From Macrostomum lignano (Eukaryota): a DNA stretch of 64,000 nucleotides. Position numbers and translations under genes: made by a program. A model generated the notes under the pieces. The model saw nothing but the letters and a program-made list of their open reading frames with translations. It had not been told where the DNA came from and searched no databases. The stretch covers positions 1 to 64,000 of the forward strand of contig NIVC01001944.1 in assembly GCA_002269645.1 (NCBI GenBank), read 5' to 3'. Shown here piece after piece: positions 1 to 28,970 of the stretch. The first letter of the stretch is position 1; each line of letters opens with the position of its first letter.

Positions 1-2358
1 TGTATTTGGGAGTGCTGTCTTTGGGTGGCGCTTGATCTCGCCACACTGATTTTGGGCGAGATTCTTACCAGCCCTCTGAGATCCGCCCTCTCTCCCCGGA
101 TTCACCCAGCAGCGCAAGCCGGTGGTGGGCAGCAGGAGGCCATCGGGCTGCAGAGGCCCCAAACCGGAGCCCCACAGAAGCTGCTGCTCTTCGGTGGCAG
201 AGGAATAGAATAGAATAGAATATAGAATAGAATAGAATAGAATAGAATAGAATAGAATAGAATAGAATAGAATAGAATAGAATAGACAATAGAATAGAAT
301 ATTCTTGGATACTGCACTGTCTAAGAAGAATTATTTATTCTTTTTTCTCTTTAGACTGTTATTTTTGGCTGCTAAGAAATTATTTTACCTCGCGTACTTC
401 AGCCGCACTACTAAGTAGTGCAAAAAGGATATGAAAGGTAGAATCGTGTTTTATGCGCATAGCGAATGACTTTGCGACTGTCAATACACATTACTGGACT
501 GGTCACCAGAGGAAATGTGCTATAGCAAATTATCTATGCAACAAACATACTGCGCGAGAACACACTGCCCTTCCATGGGGGCGCTGTATTTGGGAGTGCT
601 GTCTTTGGTGGCGCTTGATCTCGCCACACTGATTTTGGGCGAGATTCTTACCAGCCCTCTGAGATCCGCCCTCTCTCCCCGGATTCACCCAGCAGCGCAA
701 GCCGGTGGTGGGCAGCAGGAGGCCATCGGGCTGCAGAGGCCCCAAACCGGAGCCCCACAGAAGCTGCTGCTCTTCGGTGGCAGAGGAAATAGAATAGAAT
801 AGAATAGAATAGAATAGAATAGAATAGAATAGAATAGAATAGAATAGAATAGAATAGAATACAATAGAATAGAATATTCTTGGATACTGCACTGTCTAAG
901 AAGAATTATTTATTCTTTTTTCTCTTTAGACTGTTATTTTTGGCTGCTAAGAAATTATTTTACCTCGCGTACTTCAGCCGCACTACTAAGTAGTGCAAAA
1001 AGGATATGAAAGGTAGAATCGTGTTTTATGCGCATAGCGAATGACTTTGCGACTGTCAATACACATTACTGGACTGGTCACCAGAGGAAATGTGCTATAG
1101 CAAATTATCTATGCAACAAACATACTGCGCGAGAACACACTGCCCTTCCATGGGGGCGCTGTATTTGGGAGTGCTGTCTTTGGGTGGCGCTTGATCTCGC
1201 CACACTGATTTTGGGCGAGATTCTTACCAGCCCTCTGAGATCCGCCCTCTCTCCCCGGATTCACCCAGCAGCGCAAGCCGGTGGTGGGCAGCAGGAGGCC
1301 ATCGGGCTGCAGAGGCCCCAAACCGGAGCCCCACAGAAGCTGCTGCTCTTCGGTGGCAGAGGAATAGAATAGAATAGAATAGAATAGAATAGAATAGAAT
1401 AGAATAGAATAGAATAGAATAGAATAGAATACAATAGAATAGAATATTCTTGGATACTGCACTGTCTAAGAAGAATTATTTATTCTTTTTTCTCTTTAGA
1501 CTGTTATTTTTGGCTGCTAAGAAATTATTTTACCTCGCGTACTTCAGCCGCACTACTAAGTAGTGCAAAAAGGATATGAAAGGTAGAATCGTGTTTTATG
1601 CGCATAGCGAATGACTTTGCGACTGTCAATACACATTACTGGACTGGTCACCAGAGGAAATGTGCTATAGCAAATTATCTATGCAACAAACATACTGCGC
1701 GAGAACACACTGCCCTTCCATGGGGGCGCTGTATTTGGGAGTGCTGTCTTTGGGTGGCGCTTGATCTCGCCACACTGATTTTGGGCGAGATTCTTACCAG
1801 CCCTCTGAGATCCGCCCTCTCTCCCCGGACTCACCCAGCAGCGCAAGCCGGTGGTGGGCAGCAGGAGGCCATCGGGCTGCAGAGGCCCCAAACCGGAGCC
1901 CCACAGAAGCTGCTGCTCTTCGGTGGCAGAGGAATAGAATAGAATAGAATAGAATAGAATAGAATAGAATAGAATAGAATAGAATAGAATAGAATAGAAT
2001 AGAATAGAATACAATAGAATAGAATATTCTTGGATACTGCACTGTCTAAGAAGAATTATTTATTCTTTTTTCTCTTTAGACTGTTATTTTTGGCTGCTAA
2101 GAAATTATTTTACCTCGCGTACTTCAGCCGCACTACTAAGTAGTGCAAAAAGGATATGAAAGGTAGAATCGTGTTTTATGCGCATAGCGAATGACTTTGC
2201 GACTGTCAATACACATTACTGGACTGGTCACCAGAGGAAATGTGCTATAGCAAATTATCTATGCAACAAACATACTGCGCGAGAACACACTGCCCTTCCA
2301 TGGGGGCGCTGTATTTGGGAGTGCTGTCTTTGGGTGGCGCTTGATCTCGCCACACTGA
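1..2358. repeat. Tandem array of a ~570-580 bp unit (about 4 copies plus partials), each containing an (AGAAT)n microsatellite
   Basis: The anchor ACTGCACTGTCTAAG recurs at 311, 886, 1456 and 2036. The spacing (575, 570, 580) varies mainly with (AGAAT)n length. The array breaks off mid-unit at 2358 and runs off the left edge of the window. Confidence 0.95.
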
Positions 2359-2656
2359 TCCATTGGCACTGGAGTTATCGCAGCTATTCTTAACAAAATA
2401 ACTCAGGTTGAAAGAGATCTTGCAGAGTGGATCGCGAATAATATATATTTGCTACTTTTCCTCTGCAGTGCTTGAGGCTCTAGCTTAATCAGCTTTCCAG
2501 ATATTCAATGGCGGAGATTCCGAAAAATTCTAATGTATTCAAATGGGGGAATTCGGGAAAATCAATCAGGAATTGCCAAGCTGTAGTAATAAACTCAGAT
2601 TTGAGATTCTACAGATCATTAGAGCGTGCCAGTCGGTGTCTTCCGCAGAATGAAGG

Positions 2657-3828: not shown

Positions 3829-5322
3829 TTAAATAATCGACGAATTCAGCCGGAAATTCGGCTCCGAGTTCAGCTGCTGGTGACCAGACAGTGTGGCGTC
3901 GAATTCGCCCTCGTAATCTTCGTCATCGTTATCCACTTTGACATCAAGATCGAGGTCGTCCTCGGATTTCGGATCGGCGGAGGCCTGCAGGTTAGGGGTG
4001 GCGACCGAGTTTTTGAAAGGCCATTTGAGGACAGGGAGATGATGATAAATGAGGTCATTCAAGGATGAGGAAATATATGCCATGAAAGGTCGATATTTAG
4101 GGACACGGACAGGGGTCATGTAGGACAAGACAAGGGGTTATTTAGGGACATGAGTATTGGTCATTTAAGGTCACAAACATCATGACGGTATCACATGTTT
4201 AGTTGCACGCATATAAAGTGGTGAGTCATACATTAACATGGGTTGATAAAATTTCCCAGCTCACCGATCGATTATAGCCTAGCCGGGAGTCGGTCTCGCC
4301 GTCTCGACTATCGTCGTTGCCCCCAGCCAGCGATGCGGCTAAACAAGCGGCCACATCGAAGGCGGTTGTAGCGGCAGCAGCGTTAGCAGCAGTCCTACTA
4401 CCCATAGTATTGCTGCCTAACACAGCAGCGCCGGTAGTATTCGCCAGTGGCAAATAAATTTTTCTAGCCACCACCGTCTGCTTCTGCTGCTGCTGCTGGC
4501 TGTCAGAGCCGGTCGCTCCCGATGCCGGGTATCGCCGACGGCCGGAACGGGCGCGCAGCTGCGGCTCCCCTGCACTCAGGCGTCTCTGCGCGAGAGATAA
4601 GAATAGGAAAGGGGTCAAATGAGGACAATAATTCTAAGCAGAGGTCATTTCAGGACAAAAATCAACCCTGGGGTCAGTTGAGGACAAAAGTCTACCCAGG
4701 GGTCATTTGAGGACAGAATCTATCTGGAGGTCATTTGAGGACAAACTAATATACGTAAAGATCATTTGAGGGCAAACATCTACCGTGGGGTCATTGAAGA
4801 CAGAGGTTATTTGGGGCAAAAAAAGTGCGCAGGGGTCAACTGTCCTTACCTGGCCAACAGTTGTGACGGCGGCGGCGGAGGCGGCGCACCACCCCGTCGG
4901 AACAAGGCGGCAGCGTCAGCGCCTTTGACAGTCGCCGATTGGCCCGCCTGGGTCGGCCGCCGAGATCGCCAAGACTGGGCGACATGGACGACGCCTGCTC
5001 CGTCGAAGACTGCTGCGGCAGAGTTGTTGTTAAAGAGTCGGTGGCCATCGACGCGGCAGCGGCGACGGCGGCTGCGGCCGTGGCGTCGAGTAGAGGCTGG
5101 TCCAAGACAACGGCTGCCGACAGCTGCTGGCGAGAGCAGACGGCTCGACTCGAAGGCTCTGCTGGCAGGCGCGGCAACAGCGGCGCCGAATGATGAAGCG
5201 CAGTTTAGCCGAACGATCGCGCTCCGCAAGGACCTGCAATTGCAGCTGCATGCGAAGATTGGTCAGGTCCATCTGGAGGTCGTCCACACGATGCAGGCGT
5301 TTCTCGTAGTGCTGCCGAATCT
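3829..5322 (-). CDS. 3' exons of a DLK/LZK (MAP3K12/13)-like kinase gene: leucine zipper plus low-complexity tail; no kinase exons seen
   Basis: Exons at about 5322-4850, 4585-4265 and 3984-3829 (TAA), with AG/GT boundaries. The first exon reads EIRQHYEKRLHRVDDLQMDLTNLRMQLQLQ, which resembles the DLK zipper [29 protein letters not shown]. The frame is broken later in that exon (indel or assembly error). The exon 2 to exon 3 phase is consistent. Confidence 0.6.
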
Positions 5323-5675: not shown

Positions 5676-5967
5676 TCAGTGAAGCAAATATCTAAAATTG
5701 TTAACAGAAGTATAAAAGAAAAATGAACAAGAAAAAATGGTGCTCAGTTAGCCGATTCTAAAAGTGAATCGTGGATCCCCTGAGCCACGAAGAGGCCGAA
5801 CACCGTTCAGGGGGTTAATCCATAGTTCACTTTGCAGAGCAAAACAAATTCCACAGCACAGTAAACAGTGCACAGCGGTCTTTTGCAGCATTGAACTAAG
5901 GATCAATCCCGCCACTAAGAGCGGGAAGCCACAGCAAGAAATGCAAAGCGGCCAGCTTTTTGAAAGC
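5676..5967. repeat. 292-bp direct repeat, copy A, just downstream of the ZnF-SET stop codon
   Basis: TCAGTGAAGC...TTTTTGAAAGC matches 9655-9946 with no difference seen by eye; offset 3979 bp. Confidence 0.95.
5739..5813 (-). ncRNA. Putative HDV/CPEB3-like self-cleaving ribozyme fold, copy A
   Basis: Minus strand: P1 CCCCUGA/UCAGGGG; P2 GGUGUUCG/UGAGCACC; P3 GCC/GGC; L3 UCUUCGU; P1.1 U-A plus C.U; P4 CGAUUC/GAAUCG; J4/2 CUAAC with the catalytic-C equivalent at 5751. Atypical feature: +1 is C paired to G rather than a purine. Confidence 0.7.
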
Positions 5968-6035
5968 CGATAAAATCTTATAGCGAACTCCCCATGCAAC
6001 GGGGGCTGATGGTTTCAGAGAATAAACTTAGCCTT

Positions 6036-7996
6036 TCAGTCTTTAAGCCACGGATGCAGTCGAAGCACATCCGAGCGCCTTTCTCCATAATCGTAGAGTA
6101 GCTCCTCGCCTCGAGCAATGTCTCGAATGGCTTGGAAGACCAGATGCGGTTTATTGTTTACATCAGCAACAATCGGCTTCAAGTTATTTCTTCGCCGGCT
6201 ATGGTTAATGTACCGACCGACGTACTGGAAAGTGTTGGTTGCGTCGATGCAATAAGCTTGATCTCGCCAGGAAAAGAAAAACAAGAAGCAGCATGGCTTC
6301 CCTTGCTTTACAATATCTTCCTCCCGGGCGAGGCGTGCTTTTTGTCCTTGGATTAATTCTCCACCGTAAGTACAGACGACAGTGCCTTTTGGGAGGTCCG
6401 TACGGGCAAATGCCCCCAGACCCTCTGCGTCGACGCTACCGGCCTGAACCACGACGTTGCCGGTAGAAATCATTGTCTGTCGAACCACATCGGCCATAGT
6501 GAGTTGCCTCATAGACGCCATTTCGGTCGGCAGGGATCGCTCTGGACTCCCACGGCTAGCTCGGCCGTGAGGCGTCACGTGAAGGAGCGGCGTGCATGCT
6601 CCGTCCGGAGTTGTGATAGTGTCCGGGACTAGACGCTCGCGATTAGCTGCCATTGCAGGAGGGGCAACCGCAGCAGCGTGGCTATTTGAGTCCTCAGGCG
6701 AAGTCACAGTCGGCTCGAAAGGCGGATCATTGGACAGGCCATCTTTATTGGCTTCTCCTCTTTGGAGCCGAACGCTAAGGGGAACCTGACAGTGAAGAAA
6801 ATGAAGAGGACAAATGATTCATAGTGGTAACGGCATACAAATGCAGATTAACCCCAACGCTTTAATCTTTGCATTGAATAAACATGCAACAAAATTGTTC
6901 CTAAGAACACTGTTTCACACAATAAACTGTGGACTTCATTTAGTTTGACCAACTTACTTCATTGGAGGTCGCCGGTACAGCGTCGGTAGATAAGGCGACG
7001 TCTATAGTTGCAGCAGCGGCAGACTCCGGGACCAGAAGCTCGCGATTAGCTGCCATTGCAGGAGGGGCAACCGCAGCAGCGTGGCTATTTGAGTCCTCAG
7101 GCGAAGTCACAGTCGGCTCGAAAGGCGGATCATTGGACAGGCCATCTTTATTGGCTTCTCCTCTTTGGAGCCGAACGCTAAGGGGAACCTGACAGTGAAG
7201 AAAAAAGTACATCATAATGGTTACAACATGCAATTAAAGATGAACGTAACCCTTTGTTATTTTCATTAAACATACATGCAACCCAGCTGATGGTAAGATA
7301 ATTGCTCTACACCATAAACCATGGACCAGCATAAAAGACCCACCCCTTGTTGTTAATCCCTAATATTTCCTTTTGAGCAAAGTATCTAAAAGCTTTTATT
7401 TATTCATTTTTCACTTTCATCTTCTCAAATTTACCAAACATTCAACTTTTTAAGAAAAGTTGCGACCTGACCTGACCCGCGACCTGATGCTTTCAAGGTT
7501 ACAGGCCGCAGCGTTTTAACAACAAAAAACCATGGACACAAATTTTAGTTTAACACACCTCATTGGAGGTCGCCATTTCAGCGTCGGTAGCTAAGTCCGC
7601 GTCCATTGTTATAGCGGCGGCAGATTCCGGCAGGCTTTCAAGCGGCAAGGCTGGATTAAGATTTAGTTGAGGCCGGATGCCGTAAAAGGCCAACAACCGC
7701 AGGCCCTCAATTCTGTCATATGCCCTTGCCCTCGCATCAGCTACGGCTGCACGGCCGACAACAAATGCTTCGCCGAAATGGCACAGCCGCATGTGTTGTC
7801 TCATATTAGAGGCGGCAAATGAGCTGCACAGCTGGCAAAGCTTTAAATCTCTTTTGCCATGCCAACGTTTGTAGAGAATGTAGGCTTCGACTCGATCGTA
7901 GTTTGCTGTATGCTTGCTTCGAGCGTGTCGAAGGAGGGTGGCGGACCGATTGGTGGAATAGTCACACATCGGGCAAATAAACTGGTCAGGGTCCAT
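6036..7996 (-). CDS. C2H2 zinc-finger / SETD8 (PR-Set7, KMT5A)-type SET-domain fusion protein, about 472 aa, 3 exons
   Basis: Exons 7996-7559, 7188-6958 and 6785-6036, all phase 0 with GT-AG boundaries. Zinc fingers: CPMCDYSTNRSATLLRHARSKH and CQLCSSFAASNMRQHMRLCH. SET motifs: GLGAFA, VCTYGG, YCIDAT, GRYINHS, GEELLYDYG and a terminal HPWLKD, matching the SETD8 C-terminus GEELLYDYG...HPWLKH. Confidence 0.85.
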
Positions 7997-8358
7997 ATTG
8001 AATTGATTCAAGTTTTCAACGTAAACGTTTAGAGTAAAATTTAGTTCTCGATAAAACGTGTCGCGCAAACTTTCTGAAAATGAGGAAAAATCAAAATGAA
8101 ACCTTTAACTACGGTGAAAGATGAATGAACTAGGCATCTTGGTAATAGGTACTTTACAATGCACTCTTAAAGACTGTCAGACTGAAAGCAAAGAAGGCAT
8201 GTTCCGCTCGCTCGTAGTCTCAGGACAATAATAAAAGGCAGCTGAACAGATCAAATCAAATGTTTATTTGAAAGGTTGGGCGATACAACGGACTTGATAA
8301 CGCATTACAGTCCCGAATTTCTGCATAGTAGCATTAGGTTGCCAGTCACACTGAAGTT

Positions 8359-8976
8359 TTAAAGCAAATCGAGTAGTGAAACGGAATTCGAAATTGTAGG
8401 ATTTGCATTTTGTTGCAACGAAACGCTGGGAGAAGCTGGATTAAAAAAGCCATTGAAATCATTGTCTAACGTAGTTACACTACAACTGTGGCAGGGGCAT
8501 GTACAATGGCTATCAGGGCAATTGAAAATGTTTGAACGTAAAACACTTGGACCGGAGAGCTGTGAATCGGCACACTTTTCGGAGGGGTTCCTGGCGGCTA
8601 GTGATTGCAGCTTAGAAATTAAAACTTCAGCGTTTTCTTTAGCCTCGTCTAAGTTATAGGTAGATTGCGAATTTCCATTTGTCTTAGATTGCTTTCCATG
8701 TTTTACCCTAACATGGCTTGGTAAATTCGAAGTGATAACACTGCAAACAGGACACTGATAGAGGTAACCCGATTCGGTTCGCTTCTTTGCCTTTAAAAGT
8801 CCAAAAAGGCGGATTGTGGCATCAATTTGCTCTTCAGTGGCATCAGGGTGCTTTCGATTGCAATGTACCTTGAAACCAGATGCGCGTCCTGTCCAAGCAT
8901 TGCAGATCAAACAGGAAATCTGCGTATGAACCTGCACCATGTGAGACATTGTCCCGCGGGTGACATTCAAGAGCAT
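8359..8976 (-). CDS. C2H2 zinc-finger protein (5' exons not resolved)
   Basis: CLICNAWTGRASGFKVHCNRKH and CPVCSVITSNLPSHVRVKH. A minus-strand AATAAA about 90 nt after the stop suggests a separate gene. Confidence 0.65.
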   Translation of the reverse strand: MLLNVTRGTMSHMVQVHTQISCLICNAWTGRASGFKVHCNRKHPDATEEQIDATIRLFGLLKAKKRTESGYLYQCPVCSVITSNLPSHVRVKHGKQSKTNGNSQSTYNLDEAKENAEVLISKLQSLAARNPSEKCADSQLSGPSVLRSNIFNCPDSHCTCPCHSCSVTTLDNDFNGFFNPASPSVSLQQNANPTISNSVSLLDLL

Positions 8977-9654
8977 CGGGAAAACGTTGTGGGCTTATTA
9001 TTATACTGCTTCCAGGGAGGTTAGGCAAATTAAGTCTTAATTTTTGTATTCTAAGACAATGACGGAGAGGAAATGCTTTAGAGTATAAAAAATTCTGAAT
9101 CTCACATCTGAATCTCCTATCCTCTGATCGGAACCAGGTCTATCTTCCAACATGAACATCCTTTCCTCTCAACTGAAACCCTCGAGTCCGAGTCAATAAG
9201 GCTACAGGCCAAGCAGGGTGCCATTAGTTAGTGTGGGCAGTTACATTTTCAATCTCCCCAGCCAAGCCTAAAGTGCTGCTATAAATGGGATAATGAGTGC
9301 ATGGCGGGATGGGTCACTGCTATTGCTTATGGTTAACACGTAACAAAAGTAAAAGACAAAAATGTGTATATCACGATTACTAGTTCCACTTTTATTATAC
9401 TTTCGCGCTATCTTTGAAGCAGTATGCAAATATACTATTGGCATAGCGGGCGTCTAAACGCAGGCTAACATAAGAGAACTGACAAATTGCAGTGAGTGTC
9501 AAAGTGTAGTACAACGAAAAGGGACAAAAGTAAGACGCATATGCGCCTCTCGCTGCAACGACAGGCGACTGCATATAAATGCATGAAATATTAAGTAATA
9601 CAAACGAGAGAATAAAACACATTCAAGAAAGTTGCTCGTAGTTATAAATTTCAA

Positions 9655-9946
9655 TCAGTGAAGCAAATATCTAAAATTGTTAACAGAAGTATAAAAGAAA
9701 AATGAACAAGAAAAAATGGTGCTCAGTTAGCCGATTCTAAAAGTGAATCGTGGATCCCCTGAGCCACGAAGAGGCCGAACACCGTTCAGGGGGTTAATCC
9801 ATAGTTCACTTTGCAGAGCAAAACAAATTCCACAGCACAGTAAACAGTGCACAGCGGTCTTTTGCAGCATTGAACTAAGGATCAATCCCGCCACTAAGAG
9901 CGGGAAGCCACAGCAAGAAATGCAAAGCGGCCAGCTTTTTGAAAGC
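9655..9946. repeat. 292-bp direct repeat, copy B, downstream of the KDZ transposase stop codon
   Basis: Matches 5676-5967. Confidence 0.95.
9718..9792 (-). ncRNA. Putative HDV/CPEB3-like self-cleaving ribozyme fold, copy B
   Basis: Same sequence and fold as 5739-5813. Confidence 0.7.
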
Positions 9947-10109
9947 TGAAATACTGCTTACTTTGGTAGGCTGTAAACTTTACAGTAAATTTCTAAGAGA
10001 AATCGGTATACGTTTATAAACTGGTTTAGAATTTCATGTAAACAAGCTAGTTTACATCCGAAATATGATTATCCTATGGATAACAGTTTCAAGTAATCGA
10101 GTTTCGGAA

Positions 10110-12900
10110 TTAAATACTATCAATCCATTCTTCATCTGACTCAGACTGCTCACGACTTGATTCAACGTCTGAATGACTCGGGGCTTCAACGTCATCTGGC
10201 TGATTTACGTTGGTACCAGCGTCGTTTGGATGCTGCGCATCAGCAGCAGCAGCTTCAATGCTTGCGTCAATGTGATCAAAGCGAAGAGCTTGAAGTTGCT
10301 TTAAAATAGTCTGAAAGAGGCATCGAAACTGGGCTGGCAATCCAGGTTGATGATGGAGTGTTTCACAGTGCTGTTCAAGTTTAATTTGAACGTCACGCCA
10401 CTCTTGCACAATAATGATCTTTTCCTCCGCTAGACGATTCAGCTTGTGATACAAGTCAACCACCCGTCGCTTGAACCTCTCAGACACATCGATCGAAAGA
10501 CCGAAGTAGAAGTCTGACTGGAAGTCGCGAAGCTGAATCATAGTGGGCACGCGAAGGCCTGGCGGAAGCGAGCGGGCGGCCATTCGAATGTCTGCATTTA
10601 AAGCCGCAACCTTGCGTAGACATGCTCGATTTTCTTTTTGTCCATCTGAGCAGCCACTCTGACGGATCCAATAGAATCGTTCCAAAGCAAGTGCCTTAAG
10701 CTTTGCGTAAGGTTCCCTGCTCAATGGAGAGTCGCTATTGGGATTTATGGCTTCTGCATGCCATTGTTGAGCAAGATTTAAAATGGCTACCTCAGAGATT
10801 CCGGCAGGAATAGTTAATTTGTTGTTCCGCATCAAATCGCCAGCTTGTAGAAGCAATTGCTCCATTTCAGCTGAACAAGACGCGGCTGTGCGAGTTATTA
10901 GTTTTAATCGAGCAGAAAACCAATTGGAGGCGTACAACAACTGATTAGCATTGAAGCAATGCAAAATGTAAGACATACAAGCACTTCTGCGATCGGACCG
11001 CATGTACTTTAAGCTTTTACCAAACGGTCGTAGTGCAGACCAAGCGCGCTCCGTATTCTCCCCGTCGCAAAGACCCGCTCCAGGAGTTACCCGCACGGAG
11101 TACTTTAGTTGGCATTGTCTCTCGTGGCCCAGCACATGAAAGGCGTTCACAGCGCACGTGACACTGTTAAGCTGTACACCAGATGCTGACACCATGGACT
11201 TGACACGATTGGAAATGCGACAACCTGATTTTAGGAAAAAGTTTTTAAATGAATAAATAATTGAGCTTCGTGTCGCAGTACGCATGCACGTACATAAGTA
11301 AGCACAAGCATAAGTAAGCACACACTATAAGTGTATAGTGTAAATAAGTGCAGCATGATAGAAACACGATAAAAATCAACTCACCAACATCATAGATAAA
11401 AATGAGATCCTTTGAGACGGGCTGTGTCATTAGGTAATGACGAAGAGTCTGTTCTGGATAGCACAGGCCCTCACCAGCTGTAATAATGTTGCAACCTGTC
11501 AGAAGCCTGTTATGCCGGCAAAATAAGCCAAAGAAACCGTTGACATCGTGCTTGCTGGCCCTGATCACGGGTTTTTCTGTTCCAGCCTTCCAGTTAGTGC
11601 AGCCTTCTGCAGACACTTGTGTCGTAGGAGGCGGTACAGTTGCTGGTTCTACATGAATAAGCGGTGACGGCAATGAGCGTTCAGAATCTGGCACTAGACG
11701 TTGCTTCGAACCCATACTTTGTAGTCTTCGCCATCCAAATAGAGCATCAGCACAAACTACAGACTTCCGACTTGAATTTTGGTCAGGACACAAAAGACAA
11801 CTAGCAGGCCAGCTTGCTGAACACCTCTGCAACTCTCGAAACCGCAGTAGGACTCCATTACGCTGCAATCTCTGATACACTCGATCGGCTAAACCAGGGT
11901 TCCAGCGACCTTGTCCTACGACGGAGCCTTTGAAAAGACAGGTAATTGCACGAGACAGTGGCAGTTGACCGTCAAAGCACAAGGAGTCAAGAGTTGATAG
12001 AAAGCTAATTGAAAAAAATGTTAACAATTCGCCAACGCGTGACTCGCTTCCAGGAAAGTATCCTTTTGCTAGCATGGCATCAACTTTATCACAGGATTGG
12101 CACGTATAAATTCTGGCGCAAACAATTCCGTTGATGTCAATAATCTGAATTTCGGATGATGTTGTATACTCAGAAGACAAGCTTGATTCGCTACAGCAGA
12201 ATAGAGAGACAGGCTCTTCTTCTTGAATGTCTTCAAACATTAGCGATTGAGCCTAGGAAAAAGGGTTAAATTTTGTATGCGGTGTTATAAAAATATTATT
12301 CCGTACTAAGGCTATTAGCATTCTAAATACTTTTGTTTCACGTCAAATTTAATACAGCGTTATACTGCCAAATAGGCGTCATTGTTTTCTTCACAGTAAA
12401 CTAATATCCTTAGAAATTGCAATTTAGATTTTAAAACAACTTACATTCCACTGGAGGAACTTGTGAGCAGCAAAATTTCCATGCGTTATCTTTTTACAAT
12501 CACTGCAGACATCGTACTGACAATGAACACATCGGAAAACTCCAGGCTGCATGTCGCAACGAACACAGCATTTTAACTCGAATGACTGTTTATAACCGGC
12601 AGTGTAACTTTCCACAATGGCCGTGTAGTCTTCCCATTCCGTGAATTTAGGCGGCTGTTCAAACTTATTACTAATCTGTTCAGGCATAGAGTCATGGTTT
12701 CCTGCACCCAGATCTTGTGAAAGACTGCCGCCAGTGACTGTGGAACACGAGGAAGCCGTGGCAATCGATGTAGTACTTTCCAATGCATTAGGCGCATTAG
12801 ACGTTCGCAATATCCTTGGCCTTCCGCGTTGGCCAGTCATCAGTACTACTTCAGATTGTCTTTTTCTCGATTTCGCATTTAGTTTTCTTGACGAAATCAT
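10110..12900 (-). CDS. KDZ (Kyakuja-Dileera-Zisupton) transposase with N-terminal CxC cysteine clusters, about 812 aa, 3 exons, intact
   Basis: Exons 12900-12445, 12252-11385 and 11224-10110 total 2439 nt with an open frame across the GT-AG junctions (FLQWN|AQSLM and YDVG|CRIS). Motifs: CVRC...RCVHC...CSDC...H...H, CLLC, CADALF, FCRH, GEGLCYP, IYDVGC, AFHVLGHERQCQLKY, GAGLCDGENTERAWS. Confidence 0.88.
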
Positions 12901-14236: not shown

Positions 14237-14388
14237 CTAGTTCCCAGTGAGCTCCGCGAAACCCACAAACCCAAGGACACGCGCGAAGCGCGTGTCCTTG
14301 GGTTTGTGGGGTGAGCGGAGCGAACGCGCGAGGCACAAAGTGCCGAGCATGAGGAACAAACAGCCAGCCAATGCGCGAAGCGCATTGG
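14237..14388 (-). mobile_element. Helitron-like 3' terminus with GCGAAGC-capped hairpins
   Basis: A perfect 23-bp stem (14262-14284/14288-14310) with a GAA loop and a second 9-bp stem (14368-14388). The minus strand then ends CTAG|T at 14237/14236. The 5' end was not found. Confidence 0.5.
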
Positions 14389-16578
14389 GTGGTCTGGCTT
14401 GTGACGAATATAATAATATGAGACGTGTGCATCGAAAAAATGACAAGAAAAATCTCACAAAAACTGCTGTAACTTCAAAACTACAAGTGCGAATTTCACA
14501 AGTGAGGTGTCATTTTAAAGAGAAGAATCTGATCTATTTAACGAGTATAGTTTTGTATGGATTCACTGCGGAGAAAAGGAACAGGCTTCAGTTGAAATGT
14601 TTGTCTTAAGATTATGTCTTTACAAAAGTGCATTTCCTCATGCACATTAAAACTCGAGCTAAAAATGTTCGAGGGTTATAGGTGCGCCTTACTAAGATGC
14701 ATAACATTATTGGGTTGTTTTTTTCAATTGTATCAAAAAGTTGGCACTTTGGTTGCAAAAAATGCAAAAATTGAAAATGTACTTTTACAGTTTTTTGCAT
14801 TTTTTTCTATACTGCTAATAGTTAAGCATACATACTATGCACCAATTGATGCGCAATTCAAAGATACACAAGTGTGGAAGTTTTCAATTCCTAAACATTT
14901 GAAATCAGAAAGTTATCGACGAAAGACTAAAAATCATGATCTCAAACTGATTTGAGGAAAAGTGCTCATTATAATTTTTGGAATATGGAAGAAACAATTC
15001 AACGCCGTCATCTAATTCCAAACTAACTGTACTTTAAGGTACTGCGATGATTTTTTTATTGAAAGAGCGAAACCTGTTTAAATATTTGAAAAAATGGAAA
15101 AAAAGTACCTTTTTTCATAGAAATACACTCTTTTGACTGCTTAATCCGATTTCCAACAACAAAATAGTTGCTTTCCTGCTGGTGCAAACCGTTATTAGGG
15201 TGAATTTTCAAAATTGCATACTGTGCCAAAAGTAAACTGAAGCTTAATATTTATAAACATTAGAAACGGGACCACTAATGGGTATTTTACTTTGGTTACT
15301 TACTATGGACTAAACTGGCACTGGCAGAGACAGATTTGAGAGAAACTAATTGCTCCATTGTATTTGTATTTGGCTCCAGCGTTACAAATTACAATAGCTA
15401 TTTCGGGGTCTAACCGGCTAAGTTATCAAAAAAGCTAGATACCAATCACCAGTTTCATCATCAGCTATACCTACCACGATTTTATAGTCACATGCAACAG
15501 TAATACCCTCCTTTAAAAGTTTTCAATATCTAAAATGATGTGTTAAATTTTATAAAATTTCATAAACAGTGAAATTTTAGCTGTTTACGTGCTGGTGGTT
15601 TGAACGTAGCTACTTTGTGCGAAAATACACTGTCATTAATACCGTACCTATTATTGTATTTATTGTATTGAAAGTTGATGTGTAAATTGTACTTTTCTAT
15701 TTTTTTGTCATTCGTTATCGCACTCGGGCCGGCCTGCCTGCCTTGTGGGGTGTGGTGGCCTTGGCCACTTTCTCCCCCTTCTGCTAGGATCCAAAGCAAG
15801 CTTTCAAGTGTACATTTAATATTATCGATCGATTATTTAAAACAAGCCTCTAGTGGCTGGTGTTGAGAGTGAGTGGCCTTGAGTGTACGCGAAAGCAAGA
15901 GGAAGCCCATGGGCGGACTATATGAACCTTCCTTTAGTGGAAAGTTGGGCCTTGTGCATTGGATAGTGTACGCTACACAAGACAGAAGGTAAAGAGAAAG
16001 AGAACGACAGGCTAGCCAATAGCGATAGCATGTGCTTCTTTCTCTCCAGTCCACTATGGTAGGGGGGGGGAGGGGGGTGTCATACGGCCCAACTCTAACC
16101 CCCATACCCAAAACAGCGTACATGTAGAATAAGAAGGGATTGGGTCCAGATAAGTCTTCCCAAATGTACATGTATGTACAAAGACAAACACAGACAAGAA
16201 AAATGGCTCTAAAAACCATTGTTATTGTTACACTGTGTGTCTATTTTTATTAACTTGACTTTGACTTGTCTTTAGGCCCTACTCTAGCATGGTCAAGGAT
16301 AATTACTGTTACTTCATACCTAATTTACAATTAATTGCATAAGATTAAGAAGGAATAATACAATCGAGGTCGAACCCATGATCACTTGACCCACCCACCC
16401 ATGATCACTTCTGATTCTGACCTACATGTATCTACTATATCCTGCCAGTTTCTCCAGTTTTATGGGTCTTGGTGTCGGTGATTCGAGCAATTCCATTACA
16501 TTTTATCGGTGCAGTGCGTCTATTAATGCTTAGCTACTTGTATATGTGTTGCAGAACTTATGCTCGTAGTTTCCCTTC

Positions 16579-17358
16579 TAGGGATGTTGACCCCGGGAGT
16601 GCTCCCCGGGGAGCTTGTCGGGGAATACTCTCCGGGGAATTTAACCGGGGACCCTGGGGAGAAAAAATATGAAAAAATGCATTTGTAACTTAATTTTTGC
16701 CATTAAAATAAGAAACTGATTCACAGAAAGCTGATTGAAACTCTGTCTATGCTCTTTTACCGCATAATTGCTTATTTCAATGCATTACATGTATTTGAAA
16801 CACAACACACGTTTGATTGTTTTTTCACTAATAAGTCATTCAATCAAGCAAATTGCACGTAGAAAAGAAACCCGTCAGGAAAAAGAAGCCTTACTGACTA
16901 GTGACTGCTGTGTTGGTCTGCGTTGACGGCTTGACGCAGGCGCAGCGCTGCGTCATGCGTCAGGCACTGACGCATAGGGGGGTGTCATACATATACTCCC
17001 TATTAGACAAGGACAAAATGGTGATTTACATATATATGCAAGAAATAAAATTCCGATTATAAAAACAGTCTCATTCATTAATTATCCTCTCACGAGCGTA
17101 GCTGTTTAGCATGCATTCCAACAAATGCACTTTTCCGATAAAGGTGCGCGCACGATTTCGTGATGCCACATTGTCAAATACAGTTTAAAAAAACATTGTT
17201 TAAAATTTTTACCCCTGCGCCTTGAACATGTAGTACAAAGCTTAAATCAAAGTTTAAAAAATTCCACTTACAATCTAAGTGATCCGCCGTTTTAACTTAT
17301 TTTTTCTTTTCACCGGGGTCCCCGATAAGATAATTCCCTGGGGAATCGACATCCCTAA
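16579..17358. mobile_element. hAT-type MITE
   Basis: TIRs TAGGGATGTTGA / TCGACATCCCTA. 8-bp TSD TTCCCTTC at 16571-16578 and 17359-17366, with one extra A at the right end. Confidence 0.8.
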
Positions 17359-19074
17359 TTCCCTTCCTATAAATCATTTGACGTTAGAGACATTTTACAA
17401 CTCTCGCCCTACTTTATCTATTAGGCTAACTTTATGTATGACACGACGCAAAATATTAGGAGCATCAGCGTTAATAATGCCTTGAAAGTCTTTAAATAAT
17501 CGATACAACACTAGGTATTATAAAATTCCAACCCCAAAGCTCACTGGGGCGAAAAGACTTTGTCTTCATTAACTAGTATAACAACATAATAAACTAATAA
17601 TCAAGATACAAATAAGAAGTCTTTAAAGTCTAGGAATATTTATCCTTGTAGTTTCTATGAAATAGATTTTTTAGCATTATTAATTTAATTGGACAAATGA
17701 CAAAATGTCTATTTGTCCAGTATTAACTAGATGAATAAGAAAGCATGGTCATAATCCAGTAACTGGACAAATGACAATTGCCTTTATTTTTAGATTGTAT
17801 GCTAGTATAGGCTTATATTATACATAAAGAACATTTGGCAGAAAAATTAGCTAGCAAGGCAATGGTGAGCAAAATATTGACTTTTTACTATTTTCCAAAT
17901 ATGTCTATCTTATCTGGCTGGAATGAGCCACCTGACATAGGCCCTACTCACTATATATTCCACTCTTGACTCCAAGGTGCATATAGGAAAAAGATTATTT
18001 AAGTGTAAGGTGTGCGATGAAAAATACAAAGTGGGACTGTAGCCTAAGAGCAATGCTGTTACCTAGCTATTTAAGAAGTAGTACTTCAACCAACCTGCTG
18101 TCTAGCAACAAATGAGATCTACTGTCACTGACATATGACAAGCATATCTAAGATGCTTAAAGTTTAAAAAAATTCTTAATACTCTGGTCACAGTTGCTGT
18201 GTCACTGTCACAGATTCATCAGTTAATTCATCACAAATAAGCCCTCAAATCTCTAGAAGGTATTCATTTGAAGTAGCCAGGATCACCATATTATTTTTTG
18301 TTATTGGCCCTTGCTCTATGCACTGCCTACAAACTTGAAGGTCTATATTATATTATTACACAATCTAAATATACTAAATCTCTAAGGTTTGTTTGTATGC
18401 TTGAATGAATGTCCATAATGCTCTAGTTGTATAACTAAATCATGCAAATATATATCTAGATTTGAAAGGCCTTCTCGTCTCAATTTCAGCACAAAAAGTG
18501 ACAGGAATCAGGTCGATAGGTCATTCGCAAGTCAGTTTCATCACATACTACTATTGTATCAATATTTACACAAACTACACGTCACAATTTACACAATGAT
18601 GTATGACAAAAAATTACATATATTACAAACTACACGTCACAATTTACACAAATATTTACACAATAATTAATATATTACAAAAAAGCTATGCGATTAGCGA
18701 ATACGTGGCTACACACACATCAGCCATAGCTTTTATGATAGCTAGAAGAAAAAATTATTGCCGATGTAACGCATCAGCTATGGTAAACAAAGAAACACTA
18801 GGAGAACTAATGACGCAGCGCGAGAAAAATCTGTTTTAGATTTGCGGCTGTTAGTTTGTTCACATAAGATAGGCATATTAAGTGTTTTAGTAAAATAAAA
18901 TGCAAATACAATAAATAAACGTATTTTTTTCTCCTAAAACAGAACCCACCGATCGCATCAGTTTTTTTTATCAATAAATTATTACATTTGTTATACTACA
19001 GATAAATTTCCGGTGGTCTAAGCCAAGTGTAATAACTAGCGCAACGATCCCTAAATCATCGCTTGTGACGCTTG

Positions 19075-20780
19075 GAACCCCAAATCAACTCAAGAAGGCC
19101 CAAACTAGCCCTTGAAAGCTCAAACTAGCCCTGGAAAGCTCAAACTAGCGCTGGAAAGCTCAAATTGGCGCGGGAAAGCTCGAATTGGCACCGGAAGCTA
19201 AATTTGGCGCCAGGATCCCCAAATTGGCGCCAGGAACCCCAAATCAACTCAAGAAGGCCCAAACCAGCCCTAGGAAGCTCAAACTAGCCCTGGAAAGCTC
19301 AAACTAGCGCTGGAAAGCTCAAATTGGCGCGGGAAAGCTCGAATTGGCGCCGGAAGCTAAATTTGGCGTCAGGATCCCCAAATTGGCGCCAGGAACCCCA
19401 AATCAACTCAAGAAGGCCCAAACCAGCCCTAGGAAGCTCAAACTAGCCCTGGAAAGCTCAAACTAGCGCTGGAAAGCTCAAATTGGCGCGGGAAAGCTCG
19501 AATTGGCGCCGGAAGCTAAATTTGGCGCCAGGATCCCCAAATTGGCGCCAGGAACCCCAAATCAACTCAAGAAGGCCCAAACCAGCCCTAGGAAGCTCAA
19601 ACTAGCCCTGGAAAGCTCAAACTAGCGCTGGAAAGCTCAAATTGGCGCGGGAAAGCTCGAATTGGCGCCGGAAGCTAAATTTGGCGCCAGGATCCCCAAA
19701 TTGGCGCCAGGAACCCCAAATCAACTCAAGAAGGCCCAAACCAGCCCTAGGAAGCTCAAACTAGCCCTGGAAAGCTCAAACTAGCGCTGGAAAGCTCAAA
19801 TTGGCGCGGGAAAGCTCGAATTGGCGCCGGAAGCTAAATTTGGCGCCAGGATCCCCAAATTGGCGCCAGGAACCCCAAATCAACTCAAGAAGGCCCAAAC
19901 CAGCCCTAGGAAGCTCAAACTAGCCCTGGAAAGCTCAAACTAGCGCTGGAAAGCTCAAATTGGCGCGGGAAAGCTCGAATTGGCGCCGGAAGCTAAATTT
20001 GGCGCCAGGAACCCCAAATCAACTCAAGAAGGCCCAAACCAGCCCTAGGAAGCTCAAACTAGCCCTGGAAAGCTCAAACTAGCGCTGGAAAGCTCAAATT
20101 GGCGCGGGAAAGCTCGAATTGGCGCCGGAAGCTAAATTTGGCGCCAGGATCCCCAAATTGGCGCCAGGAACCCCAAATCAACTCAAGAAGGCCCAAACCA
20201 GCCCTAGGAAGCTCAAACTAGCCCTGGAAAGCTCAAACTAGCGCTGGAAAGCTCAAATTGGCGCGGGAAAGCTCGAATTGGCGCCGGAAGCTAAATTTGG
20301 CGCCAGGATCCCCAAATTGGCGCCAGGAACCCCAAATCAACTCAAGAAGGCCCAAACCAGCCCTAGGAAGCTCAAACTAGCCCTGGAAAGCTCAAACTAG
20401 CGCTGGAAAGCTCAAATTGGCGCGGGAAAGCTCGAATTGGCGCCGGAAGCTAAATTTGGCGCCAGGATCCCCAAATTGGCGCCAGGATCGCCGAATCAGC
20501 GCTGGAATTTGCCAACGGGCGTAGAAGTGGCAGCATATATCAGCTTGCTACTTTTTGGCGCCGATTTTAATATACCGGCGCCAATTTCAGCCTTTGGGCG
20601 CCCATTTTAGCGCCCTGGCAAGGTCAATGCATTTAGTTCTCACGCGATGGCGCCAAAAAATTTTTTTTTCTTTTTTTGAATTAGTGCCATGTATCTTGCC
20701 AACCAATACGAGTCAAGTTCTGGCGTCTGCTTTTCCACAGCCGCCTGGCTGGGTCCCGTCAACAAGCTATTTTTAGCGTG
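19075..20780. repeat. 159-bp higher-order tandem repeat (about 9 copies, built from ~20-bp subunits) plus a unique right flank shared with 28750-29260
   Basis: GGAACCCC anchors at 19233 and 19392; subunits GGAAAGCTCAAA... and TTGGCGCC. Confidence 0.9.
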
Positions 20781-24060: not shown

Positions 24061-24462
24061 AGATAGGACAATAGGTAGAGATACAGAGAGGGGGGTAGGA
24101 CGAGAGTAGCATGACTGAATGACCTGGAGGAAGGTGATAAAAAGCGATAAAAGCGATATGGGCGATTCTGTGTGGCAACATAACTCATCACTAACAGTGC
24201 ATCAAGTGAGTAAAAGATTAAGACAAAGGCATTGCACAATTAAGTAGTAAAAGTAAATCATAACTCAGTTATAATAACAAGGTAGTAACTTCGTATACAC
24301 TCAGCAACATCGAAAAGTCGCCATCACAGAAGTCTATGGTCGTCACTTTTGAAAGTGCAGGTAAAGTTTCAGAATCTTTGCGAGTGACGCAACGCCCCGC
24401 GGCAGACTTGAGTTGCGGAATGAAGTGGGGGGAGCGGTGCGCGAGGGTTGAACGGATTAAAG

Positions 24463-27349: not shown

Positions 27350-27519
27350 CTGAACTCTCAGCAAATAGTGATCTAGATGGAGTATACCTTATTTAAAAAT
27401 AATCAATAACAAAACAATCAGCAATAGCAAGTCCAAAAATGACACTTTTGATTTTTATAGTGCAAAATAGATATAAATATGCGCTGATCCCCGAAGCCAT
27501 GCCTTAAAGCCCAAAACAG

Positions 27520-28760: not shown

Positions 28761-28970
28761 GTGCCAACGGGTGTAGAAGTGGTAGCATATATCAGCTTGC
28801 TACTTCTTGGCGCCATTTTTAATATACCGGCGCCAATTTCAGCCTTTGGGCGCCCATTTTAGCGCCCTGGCAAGGTCAATGCATTTAGTGCTCACGCAAT
28901 GGAGCCGAAAAAAAGTTTTTTTTCTTTTTTGAATTAGTGCCATGTATCTTGACAACCAATGCGAGTCAAG

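What the first reader, a model, noticed from the sequence alone, without database searches (positions are those of the whole stretch)
6036..12900. KDZ transposon carrying a zinc-finger-fused SETD8-type histone methyltransferase
The SET domain keeps the NHS motif, both tyrosines of LLYDYG (the Tyr334/Tyr336 positions of human SETD8, which favour monomethylation) and the SETD8-type HPWL terminus. It lacks the normal SETD8 N-terminus and has two C2H2 fingers instead. Established: fungal KDZ elements travel with TET/JBP DNA-modifying genes. Inference: this animal element uses the same strategy with an H4K20me1-type writer that could be DNA-targeted by the fingers to mark its own copies or target sites. 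The shared 3' module ties the SET gene to the transposase.
Basis: partly seen in the sequence, partly recalled or inferred. Interest (0 to 1): 0.85.

Follow-up and report, generated by a model that had tools for sequence, protein, structure and literature searches.

The report
Flatworm KDZ transposon carrying SETD8-like methyltransferase
In the flatworm Macrostomum lignano, two old and divergent families of large KDZ-type DNA transposons each carry, beside the transposase, a zinc-finger protein fused to a SETD8-like histone methyltransferase domain; so an animal transposon appears to bring its own chromatin-marking enzyme, though its activity and the element's mobility are untested.

Summary
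The window is M. lignano contig NIVC01001944.1. On the minus strand lie an intact three-exon KDZ transposase gene (812 aa) and a gene fusing two zinc fingers to a SET domain. By sequence and predicted fold, that domain is closest to human KMT5A/SETD8.

On all nine contigs where an annotated KDZ gene of this family was traced, KDZ is followed by the ZnF-SET gene. A second M. lignano family has the same pairing, with KDZ 48% and SET 35% identical. It also shares a stand-alone two-finger gene, which is unannotated in the window at 8976-8359. This is a long-conserved cargo module, not the host PR-Set7 gene.

The repeated unit is about 18.6 kb. It starts at window 20921 (5'-CAGAGC) and has a subterminal array of 20-bp repeats. 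It runs off the contig start, so its 3' end is not in the window. Two copies share the 5' boundary but have unrelated flanks.

Not shown: target-site duplications, mobility, H4K20 methylation and DNA binding by the fingers. I rate it a new variant of a known kind (transposon-borne chromatin modifiers), interest about 0.7.

The parts
20499..20921 (-). 5' terminal unique region of the repeated unit. The element starts at 20921 with 5'-CAGAGCATATTCC.
   Evidence: The window copy and the L002/L010 copy are 100% identical from this base inward, and their flanks outside it are unrelated.
19074..20498 (-). 5' subterminal tandem array: 159-bp units built from about 69 copies of the 20-bp unit GAAAGCTCAAATTGGCGCCG.
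   Evidence: TRF result. Array length varies between copies. This is the main non-coding DNA similarity between family 1 and family 2, at about 80%.
14241..17571 (.). Nested insertion of about 3.3 kb with no long ORF, specific to the window copy. It is flanked by ACTAG and has a 34-nt palindrome at 14251-14321.
   Evidence: It is absent from five other copies, and the empty site is visible in L002. Palindrome. ORFs.
10110..12900 (-). KDZ transposase gene of 812 aa with three exons (12900-12445, 12252-11385, 11224-10110). It has an N-terminal B-box-like Cys cluster and a KDZ domain.
   Evidence: Canonical GT-AG sites, all in frame. Pfam KDZ E=4e-34. The model equals GenBank PAA45899.1 and three other accessions.
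9655..9949 (-). D1a: copy of the 295-bp 3' module, starting 160 nt after the KDZ stop codon.
   Evidence: 99.7% identical to 5676-5970. Present in all copies examined.
8359..8976 (-). Stand-alone two-finger gene (205 aa). It is unannotated and is paralogous to the finger module of the ZnF-SET protein. An AATAAA lies about 95 nt downstream.
   Evidence: Homologous ORF in family 2 (31% identity over 122 aa, E=5e-12). Similar to the ZnF-SET N-terminus (E=4e-5). Cys/His ligands are invariant in the alignment. The ORF is intact in 6 of 7 copies.
7559..8075 (-). Zinc-finger exon of the ZnF-SET gene. Acceptor AG is at 8075-8074, the exon starts at 8073, the ATG is at 7996 and the donor follows 7559.
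   Evidence: Sequence and frame. The annotated 497-aa CDS starts at 8071, directly after the acceptor. This fits a spliced-leader trans-splice site (inferred from PMC5730564).
6958..7188 (-). Alternative 231-nt exon created by an internal duplication. It combines the 5' part of the SET exon with the 3' part of the finger exon.
   Evidence: Repeats D2 and D4. In frame. Included in the 486- and 497-aa GenBank models and skipped in the 409-aa model.
6036..6785 (-). SET exon: linker plus a KMT5A/SETD8-like SET domain with its C-flank, ending HPWLKD and a stop codon.
   Evidence: Pfam SET. PDB KMT5A E=6e-27. AlphaFold pLDDT is mostly 75-98 over this domain. The top 19 Foldseek hits are all SETD8, with target-normalised TM-score up to 0.88.
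5676..5970 (-). D1b: second copy of the 295-bp 3' module, starting 66 nt after the SET stop codon.
3829..4405 (-). Third annotated cargo gene: a 98-aa acidic protein with two exons (4405-4265 and 3984-3829).
   Evidence: The splice model is unique. It equals GenBank PAA45897.1 and is found on 6 contigs. No homologue was found in family 2.
1..2359 (-). 3' subterminal tandem array with a period of about 575 bp. The contig starts inside it, so the element's 3' end is not in the window.
   Evidence: Self-matches and GAATA microsatellite spacing. In L008 and L004 the unit continues about 540 bp past this array to ...CTTGCTTGTTTCAGTTTG(TT), after which the flanks differ.

Best explanation
The locus is one copy of a young, low-copy family of large KDZ-superfamily DNA transposons in Macrostomum lignano. 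The unit is about 18.6 kb and is truncated here by the contig end. The element encodes an intact DDE-type KDZ transposase and a conserved cargo module.

The cargo has three parts. The first is a protein of 395 or 472 aa in which two N-terminal zinc fingers are fused to a KMT5A/SETD8-like SET domain. The second is a paralogous stand-alone two-finger protein. The third, in this family only, is a 98-aa acidic protein.

The genes lie on one strand and appear to be transcribed as one precursor. That precursor would be cut into separate mRNAs by spliced-leader trans-splicing and polyadenylation. Each of the two major genes is followed by the same 295-bp module.

Proposed mechanism (inferred). The SET domain keeps every catalytic residue of SETD8, including the Tyr at the Phe/Tyr-switch position. 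It is therefore probably an active lysine mono-methyltransferase acting on H4K20 or a similar basic tail. The finger module, shared with the stand-alone protein, would direct it to the element. The most plausible targets are the arrays of 20-bp subterminal repeats, which are the main non-coding sequence conserved between the two families. There it would set a chromatin state that favours the element, for example control of transposase expression or access, break repair after excision, or protection from heterochromatic silencing.

Shown: gene structures, linkage in all traced copies, conservation across two families, fold and motifs. Inferred: mobility, co-transcription, enzyme activity, substrate and targeting.
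For: 1. Identity and copy number. My KDZ model equals M. lignano PAA45899.1, which occurs on 4 contigs. Its 90% cluster holds 6 sequences on 9 contigs.

2. Linkage. In every retrieved locus KDZ is followed about 2 kb downstream, on the same strand, by the SET gene. Usually the 98-aa gene follows as well.

3. Second family. Family Mlig001681 has KDZ (47.6% identity) followed by ZnF-SET and then a two-finger ORF. Between families the SET domain is 35% identical (E=1e-24), the finger pair 41% (E=3e-14) and the stand-alone finger ORF 31% (E=5e-12). Open reading frames and catalytic motifs are retained at this divergence. That implies long-term purifying selection on the cargo.

4. Boundaries. The window and L002 share a sharp 5' boundary with unrelated flanks; L002's flank is a Gypsy-type integrase ORF. 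At a common 3' point, L004 has a different flank from L007 and L008. Nested insertions differ between copies.

5. Termini. 5'-CA...TG-3' without inverted repeats matches what is reported for Kyakuja elements (PMC12730594).

6. SET domain. PDB best hits are KMT5A. Residues Y300, N354, H355, E388, Y393 and W406 are invariant across 52 relatives. The model superposes on SETD8 at 1.5 A rmsd.

7. Transcription. All three genes carry the same transcriptional-unit prefix (Mlig004599, or Mlig022522 in L002). In that annotation a shared prefix means clustered precursor transcripts that were cut at trans-splice and poly(A) sites (PMC5730564). The annotated SET CDS starts at the acceptor AG.

8. Repeated 3' modules also occur after all three genes in family 2.
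Against: No terminal inverted repeats were found. No single copy with both ends was obtainable, so target-site duplications and empty sites are untested. The 3' terminus rests on one divergence point between L004 and L007/L008.

Copies are at least 99% identical over 9 kb. The assembly is known to hold 180-312 Mb of duplicated sequence. Some of the nine contigs are therefore likely homeologous or allelic copies of the same site; L007 and L008 share about 5 kb of 3' flank.

Several copies carry frameshift indels in KDZ, which may be real or may be PacBio assembly errors.

The finger region is modelled with low confidence and its Pfam scores are marginal. A neighbour-joining tree does not place the SET domain inside animal KMT5A. 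Its nearest neighbours by distance include short viral or metagenomic SET proteins.

No expression data were examined directly.
Confidence: 0.72

Rival explanations
1. This is a host gene cluster rather than a mobile element. A domesticated KDZ-derived gene and a ZnF-SET gene form a trans-spliced host operon embedded in satellite DNA. The cluster was multiplied by polyploidy and segmental duplication.
For: No terminal inverted repeats or target-site duplications were demonstrated. Copies share more than 18 kb at 97-99.8% identity and are bounded by tandem arrays. The genome is a hidden polyploid with a large duplicated fraction, and the published annotation excluded transcripts overlapping known repeats yet kept these genes. 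L007 and L008 share their 3' flank.
Against: Family 1 occupies at least 9 contigs and family 2 occupies 4. A 78%-identical third variant (P0029) also exists. Two copies share the identical first base while their outside flanks are unrelated; one flank is a Gypsy-type integrase ORF. At a common 3' point a different flank is seen in L004. The termini are CA...TG, as in Kyakuja elements. The 812-aa transposase ORF is intact. A fragment of a related element's 5' end lies elsewhere in the window (27506-28970).
Confidence: 0.15
2. The element is a transposon with SET cargo, but the enzyme's relevant substrate is not H4K20. It methylates a non-histone protein, such as the transposase itself, PCNA or a repair factor. 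The fingers would mediate protein or RNA contacts rather than DNA targeting.
For: From general knowledge, human SETD8 also methylates PCNA, p53 and Numb. The fingers are two isolated units about 25 residues apart and the second has non-canonical spacing. They model poorly. The SET domain is only about 40% identical to KMT5A and does not nest within animal KMT5A in the tree.
Against: The SET core and the C-flank HPWLK, which I recall forms part of the H4 peptide groove in SETD8, are conserved. The fold superposes on SETD8-H4 complexes. The main non-coding DNA conserved between the two families is a 20-bp repeat array, a natural DNA target.
Confidence: 0.2
3. The functional product is a single transposase-ZnF-SET fusion protein. 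It would be made by cis-splicing from a donor near the end of the KDZ exon 3 (about 10150) to the acceptor at 8074.
For: UniRef models A0A1I8J3S7 and A0A1I8J1A4 (1347 aa) join ...VESS to QSLRDTF... The donor C|GTGAGC and the acceptor are both phase 1, so the frames are compatible.
Against: Those models are ab initio predictions that also skip conserved parts of the KDZ domain. The transcript-based GenBank annotation keeps the genes separate. In family 2 the ZnF-SET protein is annotated as complete, starting at its own ATG, which aligns with M1 of MDPDQF in family 1.
Confidence: 0.08
4. The SET gene is the host PR-Set7/KMT5A orthologue, or a recent functionless transduplicated fragment that merely lies next to a KDZ copy.
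For: Its best characterised relatives are KMT5A proteins.
Against: It is multicopy and always linked to KDZ. The normal KMT5A N-terminus is replaced by fingers. The same architecture and linkage are kept in a family with only 35-48% protein identity, with intact ORFs and catalytic residues.
Confidence: 0.02

Closest known systems
Fungal KDZ (Kyakuja, Dileera, Zisupton) transposons carrying TET/JBP dioxygenase genes (Iyer et al. 2014; PMC12730594)
   Same: Same transposase superfamily (Pfam KDZ, E=4e-34). Both carry a chromatin or DNA-modifying enzyme gene beside the transposase, and the pairing is conserved across diverged element lineages. The termini here (5'-CA, candidate TG-3', no inverted repeats) resemble those of Kyakuja.
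   Different: The host is an animal (a flatworm). The cargo is a histone-type lysine methyltransferase fused to zinc fingers, plus a stand-alone finger protein, rather than a DNA dioxygenase. The genes seem to be expressed as a trans-spliced polycistronic unit. Target-site duplications were not determined, and the subgroup (K, D or Z) was not assigned.
Human KMT5A / SETD8 / PR-Set7, the H4K20 mono-methyltransferase
   Same: The SET core and both flanking helices are SETD8-like. The equivalents of Tyr245, Asn-His-Ser, Tyr334 and Tyr336, and the C-terminal HPWLK, are all kept. It is the best hit by sequence and by fold.
   Different: Only about 40% identical. The PCNA-interacting, cell-cycle-regulated N-terminus is missing and is replaced by two zinc fingers. 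It is multicopy and transposon-linked, so it is not an orthologue. Its activity is untested.
SET genes incorporated in HarbingerS and MuDR transposons of Phytophthora (cited in PMC12730594)
   Same: These are DNA transposons that have taken up a SET-domain methyltransferase gene.
   Different: They belong to different transposon superfamilies and occur in oomycetes. I could not inspect those sequences, so the SET subtype and any finger fusion are unknown to me.
SETMAR (primate SET domain fused to a mariner transposase)
   Same: A SET methyltransferase and a transposase are physically associated.
   Different: SETMAR is a single-copy host gene that captured an immobile transposase. Here the mobile element carries the SET gene, and transposase and SET are normally separate proteins. 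The SET subtype also differs: SETMAR scores E=1e-5 against 6e-27 for KMT5A.
VANC anti-silencing proteins of plant VANDAL (MuDR) transposons
   Same: This is a transposon-encoded factor proposed to act sequence-specifically on the element's own chromatin state. It offers a possible model for the finger protein plus subterminal repeats.
   Different: VANC has no enzymatic domain and is unrelated in sequence. The analogy is functional only and is untested here.

Membership tests
KDZ transposon superfamily | Encodes a KDZ-type transposase domain (Pfam PF18758). | tested here: met
   E=4e-34, 118.7 bits, profile positions 4-212 of 217, on the spliced 812-aa protein.
KDZ transposon superfamily | N-terminal cysteine cluster (CxC-type) upstream of the transposase domain. 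| tested here: inconclusive
   CxC1 scores E=0.006, below the cut-off. B-box-like hits score E=0.003. Cys-rich motifs are visible and are conserved in family 2.
KDZ transposon superfamily | Multiple dispersed copies with defined termini and 7-8-bp target-site duplications. | tested here: inconclusive
   Multiple copies exist. A 5' terminus is shared with unrelated flanks and there is a candidate 3' terminus. No copy with both ends was obtainable, so target-site duplications are untested. No inverted repeats were found, as reported for Kyakuja.
KDZ transposon superfamily | Assignment to Kyakuja, Dileera or Zisupton by transposase phylogeny. | not tested
KMT5A/SETD8/PR-Set7 family | SET domain closest to KMT5A, with its N- and C-flanking helices. 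| tested here: met
   PDB phmmer gives KMT5A 6e-27 against EZH2 3e-13. The top 19 Foldseek hits are all SETD8, with target-normalised TM-score up to 0.88.
KMT5A/SETD8/PR-Set7 family | Catalytic and product-specificity residues: Tyr245, Asn-His-Ser, Tyr334 switch, Tyr336 and the C-terminal HPWLK. | tested here: met
   The alignment shows CTYGG, INHS, LLYDYG and HPWLK. Invariant columns are listed. Family 2 keeps the same residues, with FPWLN at the C-terminus.
KMT5A/SETD8/PR-Set7 family | Orthology: a host gene with the PCNA-binding, degron-containing N-terminal region. | tested here: not met
   Only the SET region aligns to full-length KMT5A (residues 219-351 of 7d1z_K). The N-terminus consists of zinc fingers. 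The gene is multicopy and KDZ-linked.
KMT5A/SETD8/PR-Set7 family | H4K20 mono-methylation activity. | not testable with these tools
   Requires a biochemical assay.
Transposon-borne chromatin or DNA modifiers (cargo genes) | The cargo lies inside the element boundaries in several copies, and the pairing is kept across diverged lineages. | tested here: met
   The cargo lies between the 5' terminus (window 20921) and the candidate 3' terminus in all copies. It is conserved in family 2.

The most novel reading that the evidence does not exclude
An animal DNA transposon family encodes its own sequence-targeted chromatin-writing system. The finger module is present both fused to a SETD8-like enzyme and as a free paralogue. 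It would recognise the element's 20-bp subterminal repeat arrays. The enzyme would deposit H4K20me1 (or a related mark) on the element or at excision and insertion sites, to regulate transposition, break repair or escape from silencing. The free finger protein would act as competitor or co-factor. This would be the histone-mark counterpart of the fungal KDZ-TET/JBP partnership, in a flatworm where transgenesis is already available.
Probability: 0.25. Interest if true: 0.85.

Novelty: new variant of a known kind. Interest (0 to 1): 0.7.

Why it matters
Transposons that carry enzymes acting on epigenetic marks are documented in the literature I could search for fungi (TET/JBP) and oomycetes (SET). 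My full-text searches found no report of a KDZ-SET or SETD8-like cargo in an animal transposon.

Here the pairing is conserved across two families with under 50% protein identity. That argues for function rather than accidental capture.

It would give a concrete animal example of a mobile element manipulating histone methylation. It would also offer a natural zinc-finger-tethered SETD8-like domain. The system is testable because M. lignano has transgenesis and an annotated genome (PMC5730564); RNAi is also used in this species, from my own knowledge.

It also flags unannotated genes. The two-finger ORF is missing from the annotation. These 'hypothetical protein' loci in the M. lignano genome are in fact transposon genes.

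Tried and rejected
1. The search for homologous proteins with the SET ORF returned only about 160-aa bacterial SET proteins. It did not return even the M. lignano proteins that contain the query, so it was uninformative.

2. Rfam and tRNA scans of the window found nothing. D1 is therefore not a recognisable tRNA-derived SINE or a known RNA.

3. A search for terminal inverted repeats between the upstream and downstream regions gave only chance-level 12-15-mers.

4. I considered D1 as LTR-like repeats bounding a retro-element. I rejected this: there are no TG...CA ends, no flanking target-site duplication and no reverse transcriptase.

I worked around it with exact cluster look-ups.

6. I tried to reach the 3' end of the L002 copy, the only copy with a visible 5' end in a long contig. 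The attempt (L010) stopped about 1.3 kb short, inside a nested 1128-bp insertion.

7. I looked for an empty-site reference among the Gypsy copies in hand and found no match.

8. A neighbour-joining tree of 149 SET domains left the transposon SETs on long branches among short unnamed sequences, so their origin is unresolved.

9. The nearest SET by distance (P0033) lies on a gene-dense contig that looks like a giant virus, and is not a KDZ element.

10. Metagenomic ZnF-SET proteins with the same architecture (P0169, P0081) gave no KDZ neighbour. One lies beside a 1129-aa OTU-domain ORF unrelated to KDZ.

11. The 98-aa gene has no counterpart in family 2.

12. Full-text searches for the gene identifiers found no paper.

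Full report
**Source and gene models.** The window is eukaryotic. Exact look-up of my spliced KDZ model identified it as Macrostomum lignano, assembly GCA_002269645.1. Locus L001 from contig NIVC01001944.1 is 100% identical to window 110-22900, so the window is positions 1-64000 of that contig.

All relevant genes are on the minus strand. The KDZ gene has three exons (12900-12445, 12252-11385, 11224-10110) with canonical GT-AG introns. It encodes 812 aa and hits Pfam KDZ at E=4e-34 over profile positions 4-212 of 217.

The SET gene consists of three exons:
- a finger exon (acceptor AG at 8075-8074, ATG at 7996, donor after 7559);
- an optional 231-nt exon (7188-6958), produced by an internal duplication (repeats D2 and D4);
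- the SET exon (6785-6036).

All junctions are phase 0 and in frame. My translations equal the GenBank proteins of 497, 486 and 409 aa, the last of which skips the duplicated exon. The finger-SET fusion is therefore supported independently by the transcript-based annotation.

**The SET domain.** Against all PDB sequences the 14 best hits are KMT5A/SETD8 (E down to 6e-27). Next come a Cryptosporidium SET8-like protein (5e-17) and EZH2 (3e-13).

The alignment keeps the catalytic Tyr (CTYGG against VEYHG), the NHS motif, both tyrosines of LLYDYG and the terminal HPWLK. In a 52-sequence alignment Y300, G302, D341, N354, H355, E388, Y393 and W406 are invariant.

An AlphaFold model has pLDDT mostly 75-98 over the domain. 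Its 19 best Foldseek matches are all SETD8 structures, the best at target-normalised TM-score 0.88 and rmsd 1.5 A. Only the SET part aligns to full-length KMT5A, so the usual N-terminal region is absent.

The finger region is modelled poorly (pLDDT 40-67). Structure therefore says nothing about what the fingers bind.

**Linkage test.** The KDZ protein cluster has six sequence variants on nine contigs. In every retrieved locus KDZ is followed about 2 kb downstream, on the same strand, by the SET gene, and usually by a 98-aa gene about 1.6 kb further on. For the three other contigs carrying the identical KDZ protein, the tool reported the same neighbouring proteins.

Over 9 kb the copies are at least 99% identical. 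The ZnF-SET coding sequence differs by only two substitutions, both in one copy. Several copies have frameshift indels in KDZ.

**A second, deeply diverged family.** The full-library HMMER search with the 409-aa protein found only five proteins below 1e-30. One of them, P0032 (300 aa, M. lignano Mlig001681, on 4 contigs), was at first a candidate host PR-Set7. Its loci show otherwise: an 808-809-aa KDZ gene lies immediately upstream on the same strand.

- This KDZ is 47.6% identical to the window's.
- P0032 has the same two N-terminal fingers (41% identity, E=3e-14) and a SET domain (35% identity, E=1e-24).
- A 290-aa ORF downstream of it is homologous to the unannotated 205-aa ORF at window 8976-8359 (31% identity, E=5e-12).
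- That ORF carries a finger pair paralogous to the one fused to SET (E=4e-5; ligand Cys and His invariant).

So a three-gene module (KDZ, ZnF-SET, free ZnF) is conserved in two families, although the gene order differs. A third variant, 78% identical in the finger-linker region, also exists in M. lignano (P0029). Open frames and catalytic motifs are retained at 35-48% identity. This rules out a recent accidental capture and also rules out the host-orthologue reading.

**Extent and ends of the element.** Similarity between copies does not stop at 6036-12900. Upstream it runs to window 20921. There the window and L002 both begin CAGAGCATATTCC, and beyond that base their flanks are unrelated. L002's flank encodes a Gypsy-type integrase.

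Inside the end lie a 423-bp unique region and a 1.4-kb array of 159-bp units built from the 20-bp repeat GAAAGCTCAAATTGGCGCCG. The window copy alone has a nested insertion of about 3.3 kb at roughly 14241-17571, flanked by ACTAG.

Downstream, the unit continues through the 98-aa gene (4405-3829) and a tandem array of about 575-bp units (1-2359), in which the contig starts. In longer copies it continues about 540 bp further, to ...CTTGCTTGTTTCAGTTTG(TT). After that point L004 has a different flank from L007 and L008.

Without nested insertions the unit is about 18.6 kb. Its ends, 5'-CA...TG-3' without inverted repeats, match what is reported for Kyakuja, which makes 7-bp target-site duplications.

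I could not obtain both ends of one copy, so target-site duplications remain untested. L010 stopped about 1.3 kb short, inside a 1128-bp nested insertion that it shares with L007. L006 diverges at the position equivalent to window 18194; the sequence there carries a MULE transposase, so it is either a nested insertion or a truncation.

**Repeated 3' modules.** D1 (295 bp, 99.7% identical) follows the KDZ stop by 160 nt and the SET stop by 66 nt. It is present in all copies.

Family 2 has its own module after each of its three genes: 577 bp after the KDZ gene, about 590 bp after the SET gene (97% identical to the first), and a 250-bp core after the free-finger gene. The copy after the KDZ gene overlaps the last 46 nt of the KDZ coding sequence.

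The two families' modules share no significant sequence, apart from a short CTTTTATACT-like motif. The arrangement recurs, but its role is unknown. It could be shared 3' UTR or processing signals, protein-binding sites, or a footprint of how the cargo was inserted, kept uniform by gene conversion.

**Expression (inferred).** In GenBank the three genes carry the same prefix: Mlig004599 g2, g4 and g5, or Mlig022522 g1 and g3 in L002. In that annotation, prefixes are given to clusters of 'transcriptional units'. These are often trans-splicing precursors holding several genes, and they are cut at spliced-leader and poly(A) sites (PMC5730564).

The 497-aa CDS starts in the first full codon after the acceptor AG. 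This fits a polycistronic precursor with spliced-leader trans-splicing in front of the ZnF-SET mRNA. Translation would then start at M7996, which aligns with the annotated start of the family 2 protein.

Two ab initio UniRef models instead splice a donor about 13 codons before the KDZ stop codon to this acceptor, giving a frame-compatible transposase-ZnF-SET fusion. Those models also delete conserved KDZ segments, so I give them little weight.

**Conserved non-coding DNA.** Apart from coding regions and short scattered matches, the main DNA similarity between families 1 and 2 is the 20-bp-unit array near the 5' end, at about 80%. This makes the array the best candidate binding site for the transposase or the finger proteins. 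That is inference only.

**Comparison with known systems and novelty.** The closest known system is the fungal KDZ-TET/JBP association. SET genes in Phytophthora HarbingerS and MuDR elements are a precedent for SET cargo. SETMAR is the reverse case, a host SET gene that captured a transposase.

Full-text searches found no report of a KDZ-SET or SETD8-like cargo in an animal transposon. The same finger-pair-plus-SET architecture occurs in unnamed metagenomic and read-archive proteins (P0037, P0081, P0146, P0169). The protein family is therefore wider than M. lignano, but KDZ linkage could not be shown for those proteins.

**Verdict.** Enzymatic specificity, DNA targeting and mobility remain to be shown.

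Noticed in passing
window 27506-28970 (and 29230-29258): A second array of the 20-bp-unit repeat is followed by 220 bp that are 93% identical to positions 205-423 of the element's 5' region. Short matches to family 2 non-coding DNA lie nearby (27353-27478, 24102-24278). This looks like the 5' part of another related KDZ element, possibly internally deleted, interrupted by a non-LTR retrotransposon.
   Followed up: partly
window 24897-27300 (+): Two overlapping ORFs with reverse-transcriptase (RVT_1) hits: a frameshifted non-LTR retrotransposon copy in a GC-rich stretch (57-59% GC).
   Followed up: partly
window 33949-40115 (+): Apparently intact Gypsy-type LTR retrotransposon coding region: a gag-like ORF, then protease, RT and RNase H (820 aa), then integrase (911 aa).
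   Followed up: partly
window 61932-63398 (+), with ORFs at 58008-61353: An ORF with protein-primed type B DNA polymerase and endonuclease VII hits, suggesting a Polinton/Maverick-like element at the right end of the window.
   Followed up: no
window 54398-55096 (-): An exon encoding a CoA-transferase domain (Pfam E=3e-40). It looks like succinyl-CoA:3-ketoacid CoA transferase and is probably an ordinary host gene.
   Followed up: no
window 14241-17571: Nested insertion of about 3.3 kb, non-coding, present only in this copy. It is flanked by ACTAG, has a 34-nt near-perfect palindrome at its left end (14251-14321) and CCCAGTGAGC/GCTCACTGGG inverted near both ends. It is an unclassified non-autonomous element.
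   Followed up: partly
L007 14520-15649; also the end of L010: A 1128-bp insertion (TTGTTGTTGAACGGGG...CCCCCCCTAAA) next to CAGTCTG repeats is shared by two element copies and absent from L008 and L004. It shows that copies propagated after acquiring a nested insertion.
   Followed up: partly
proteins P0030 (seadragon, 4152 aa, 5 SET domains) and P0031 (sea cucumber, 799 aa, 8 partial SET hits): SETD8-like domains are repeated many times within single annotated proteins of other animals. These may be tandem arrays or expansions of SETD8-like genes, possibly also linked to mobile elements.
   Followed up: no
protein P0104 (1230 aa): A SETD8-like SET domain (47% identical) sits at the C-terminus of a large protein with Cys-rich, transposase-like N-terminal motifs and no Pfam hit. 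Its source organism was not identified.
   Followed up: no
L015 1180-4569 and 6381-7232: On a metagenomic contig a finger-pair-plus-SET gene lies 1.8 kb downstream, on the same strand, of a 1129-aa ORF with an N-terminal OTU protease domain. The ORF is not KDZ and may belong to a different mobile element.
   Followed up: partly
L017 (Logan SRR33465455 contig, 51 kb): The SET protein closest by distance (P0033, 138 aa, 46% identity) sits on a gene-dense, two-stranded contig that also has Evr1/Alr and HARE-HTH genes. It looks like a giant virus.
   Followed up: no
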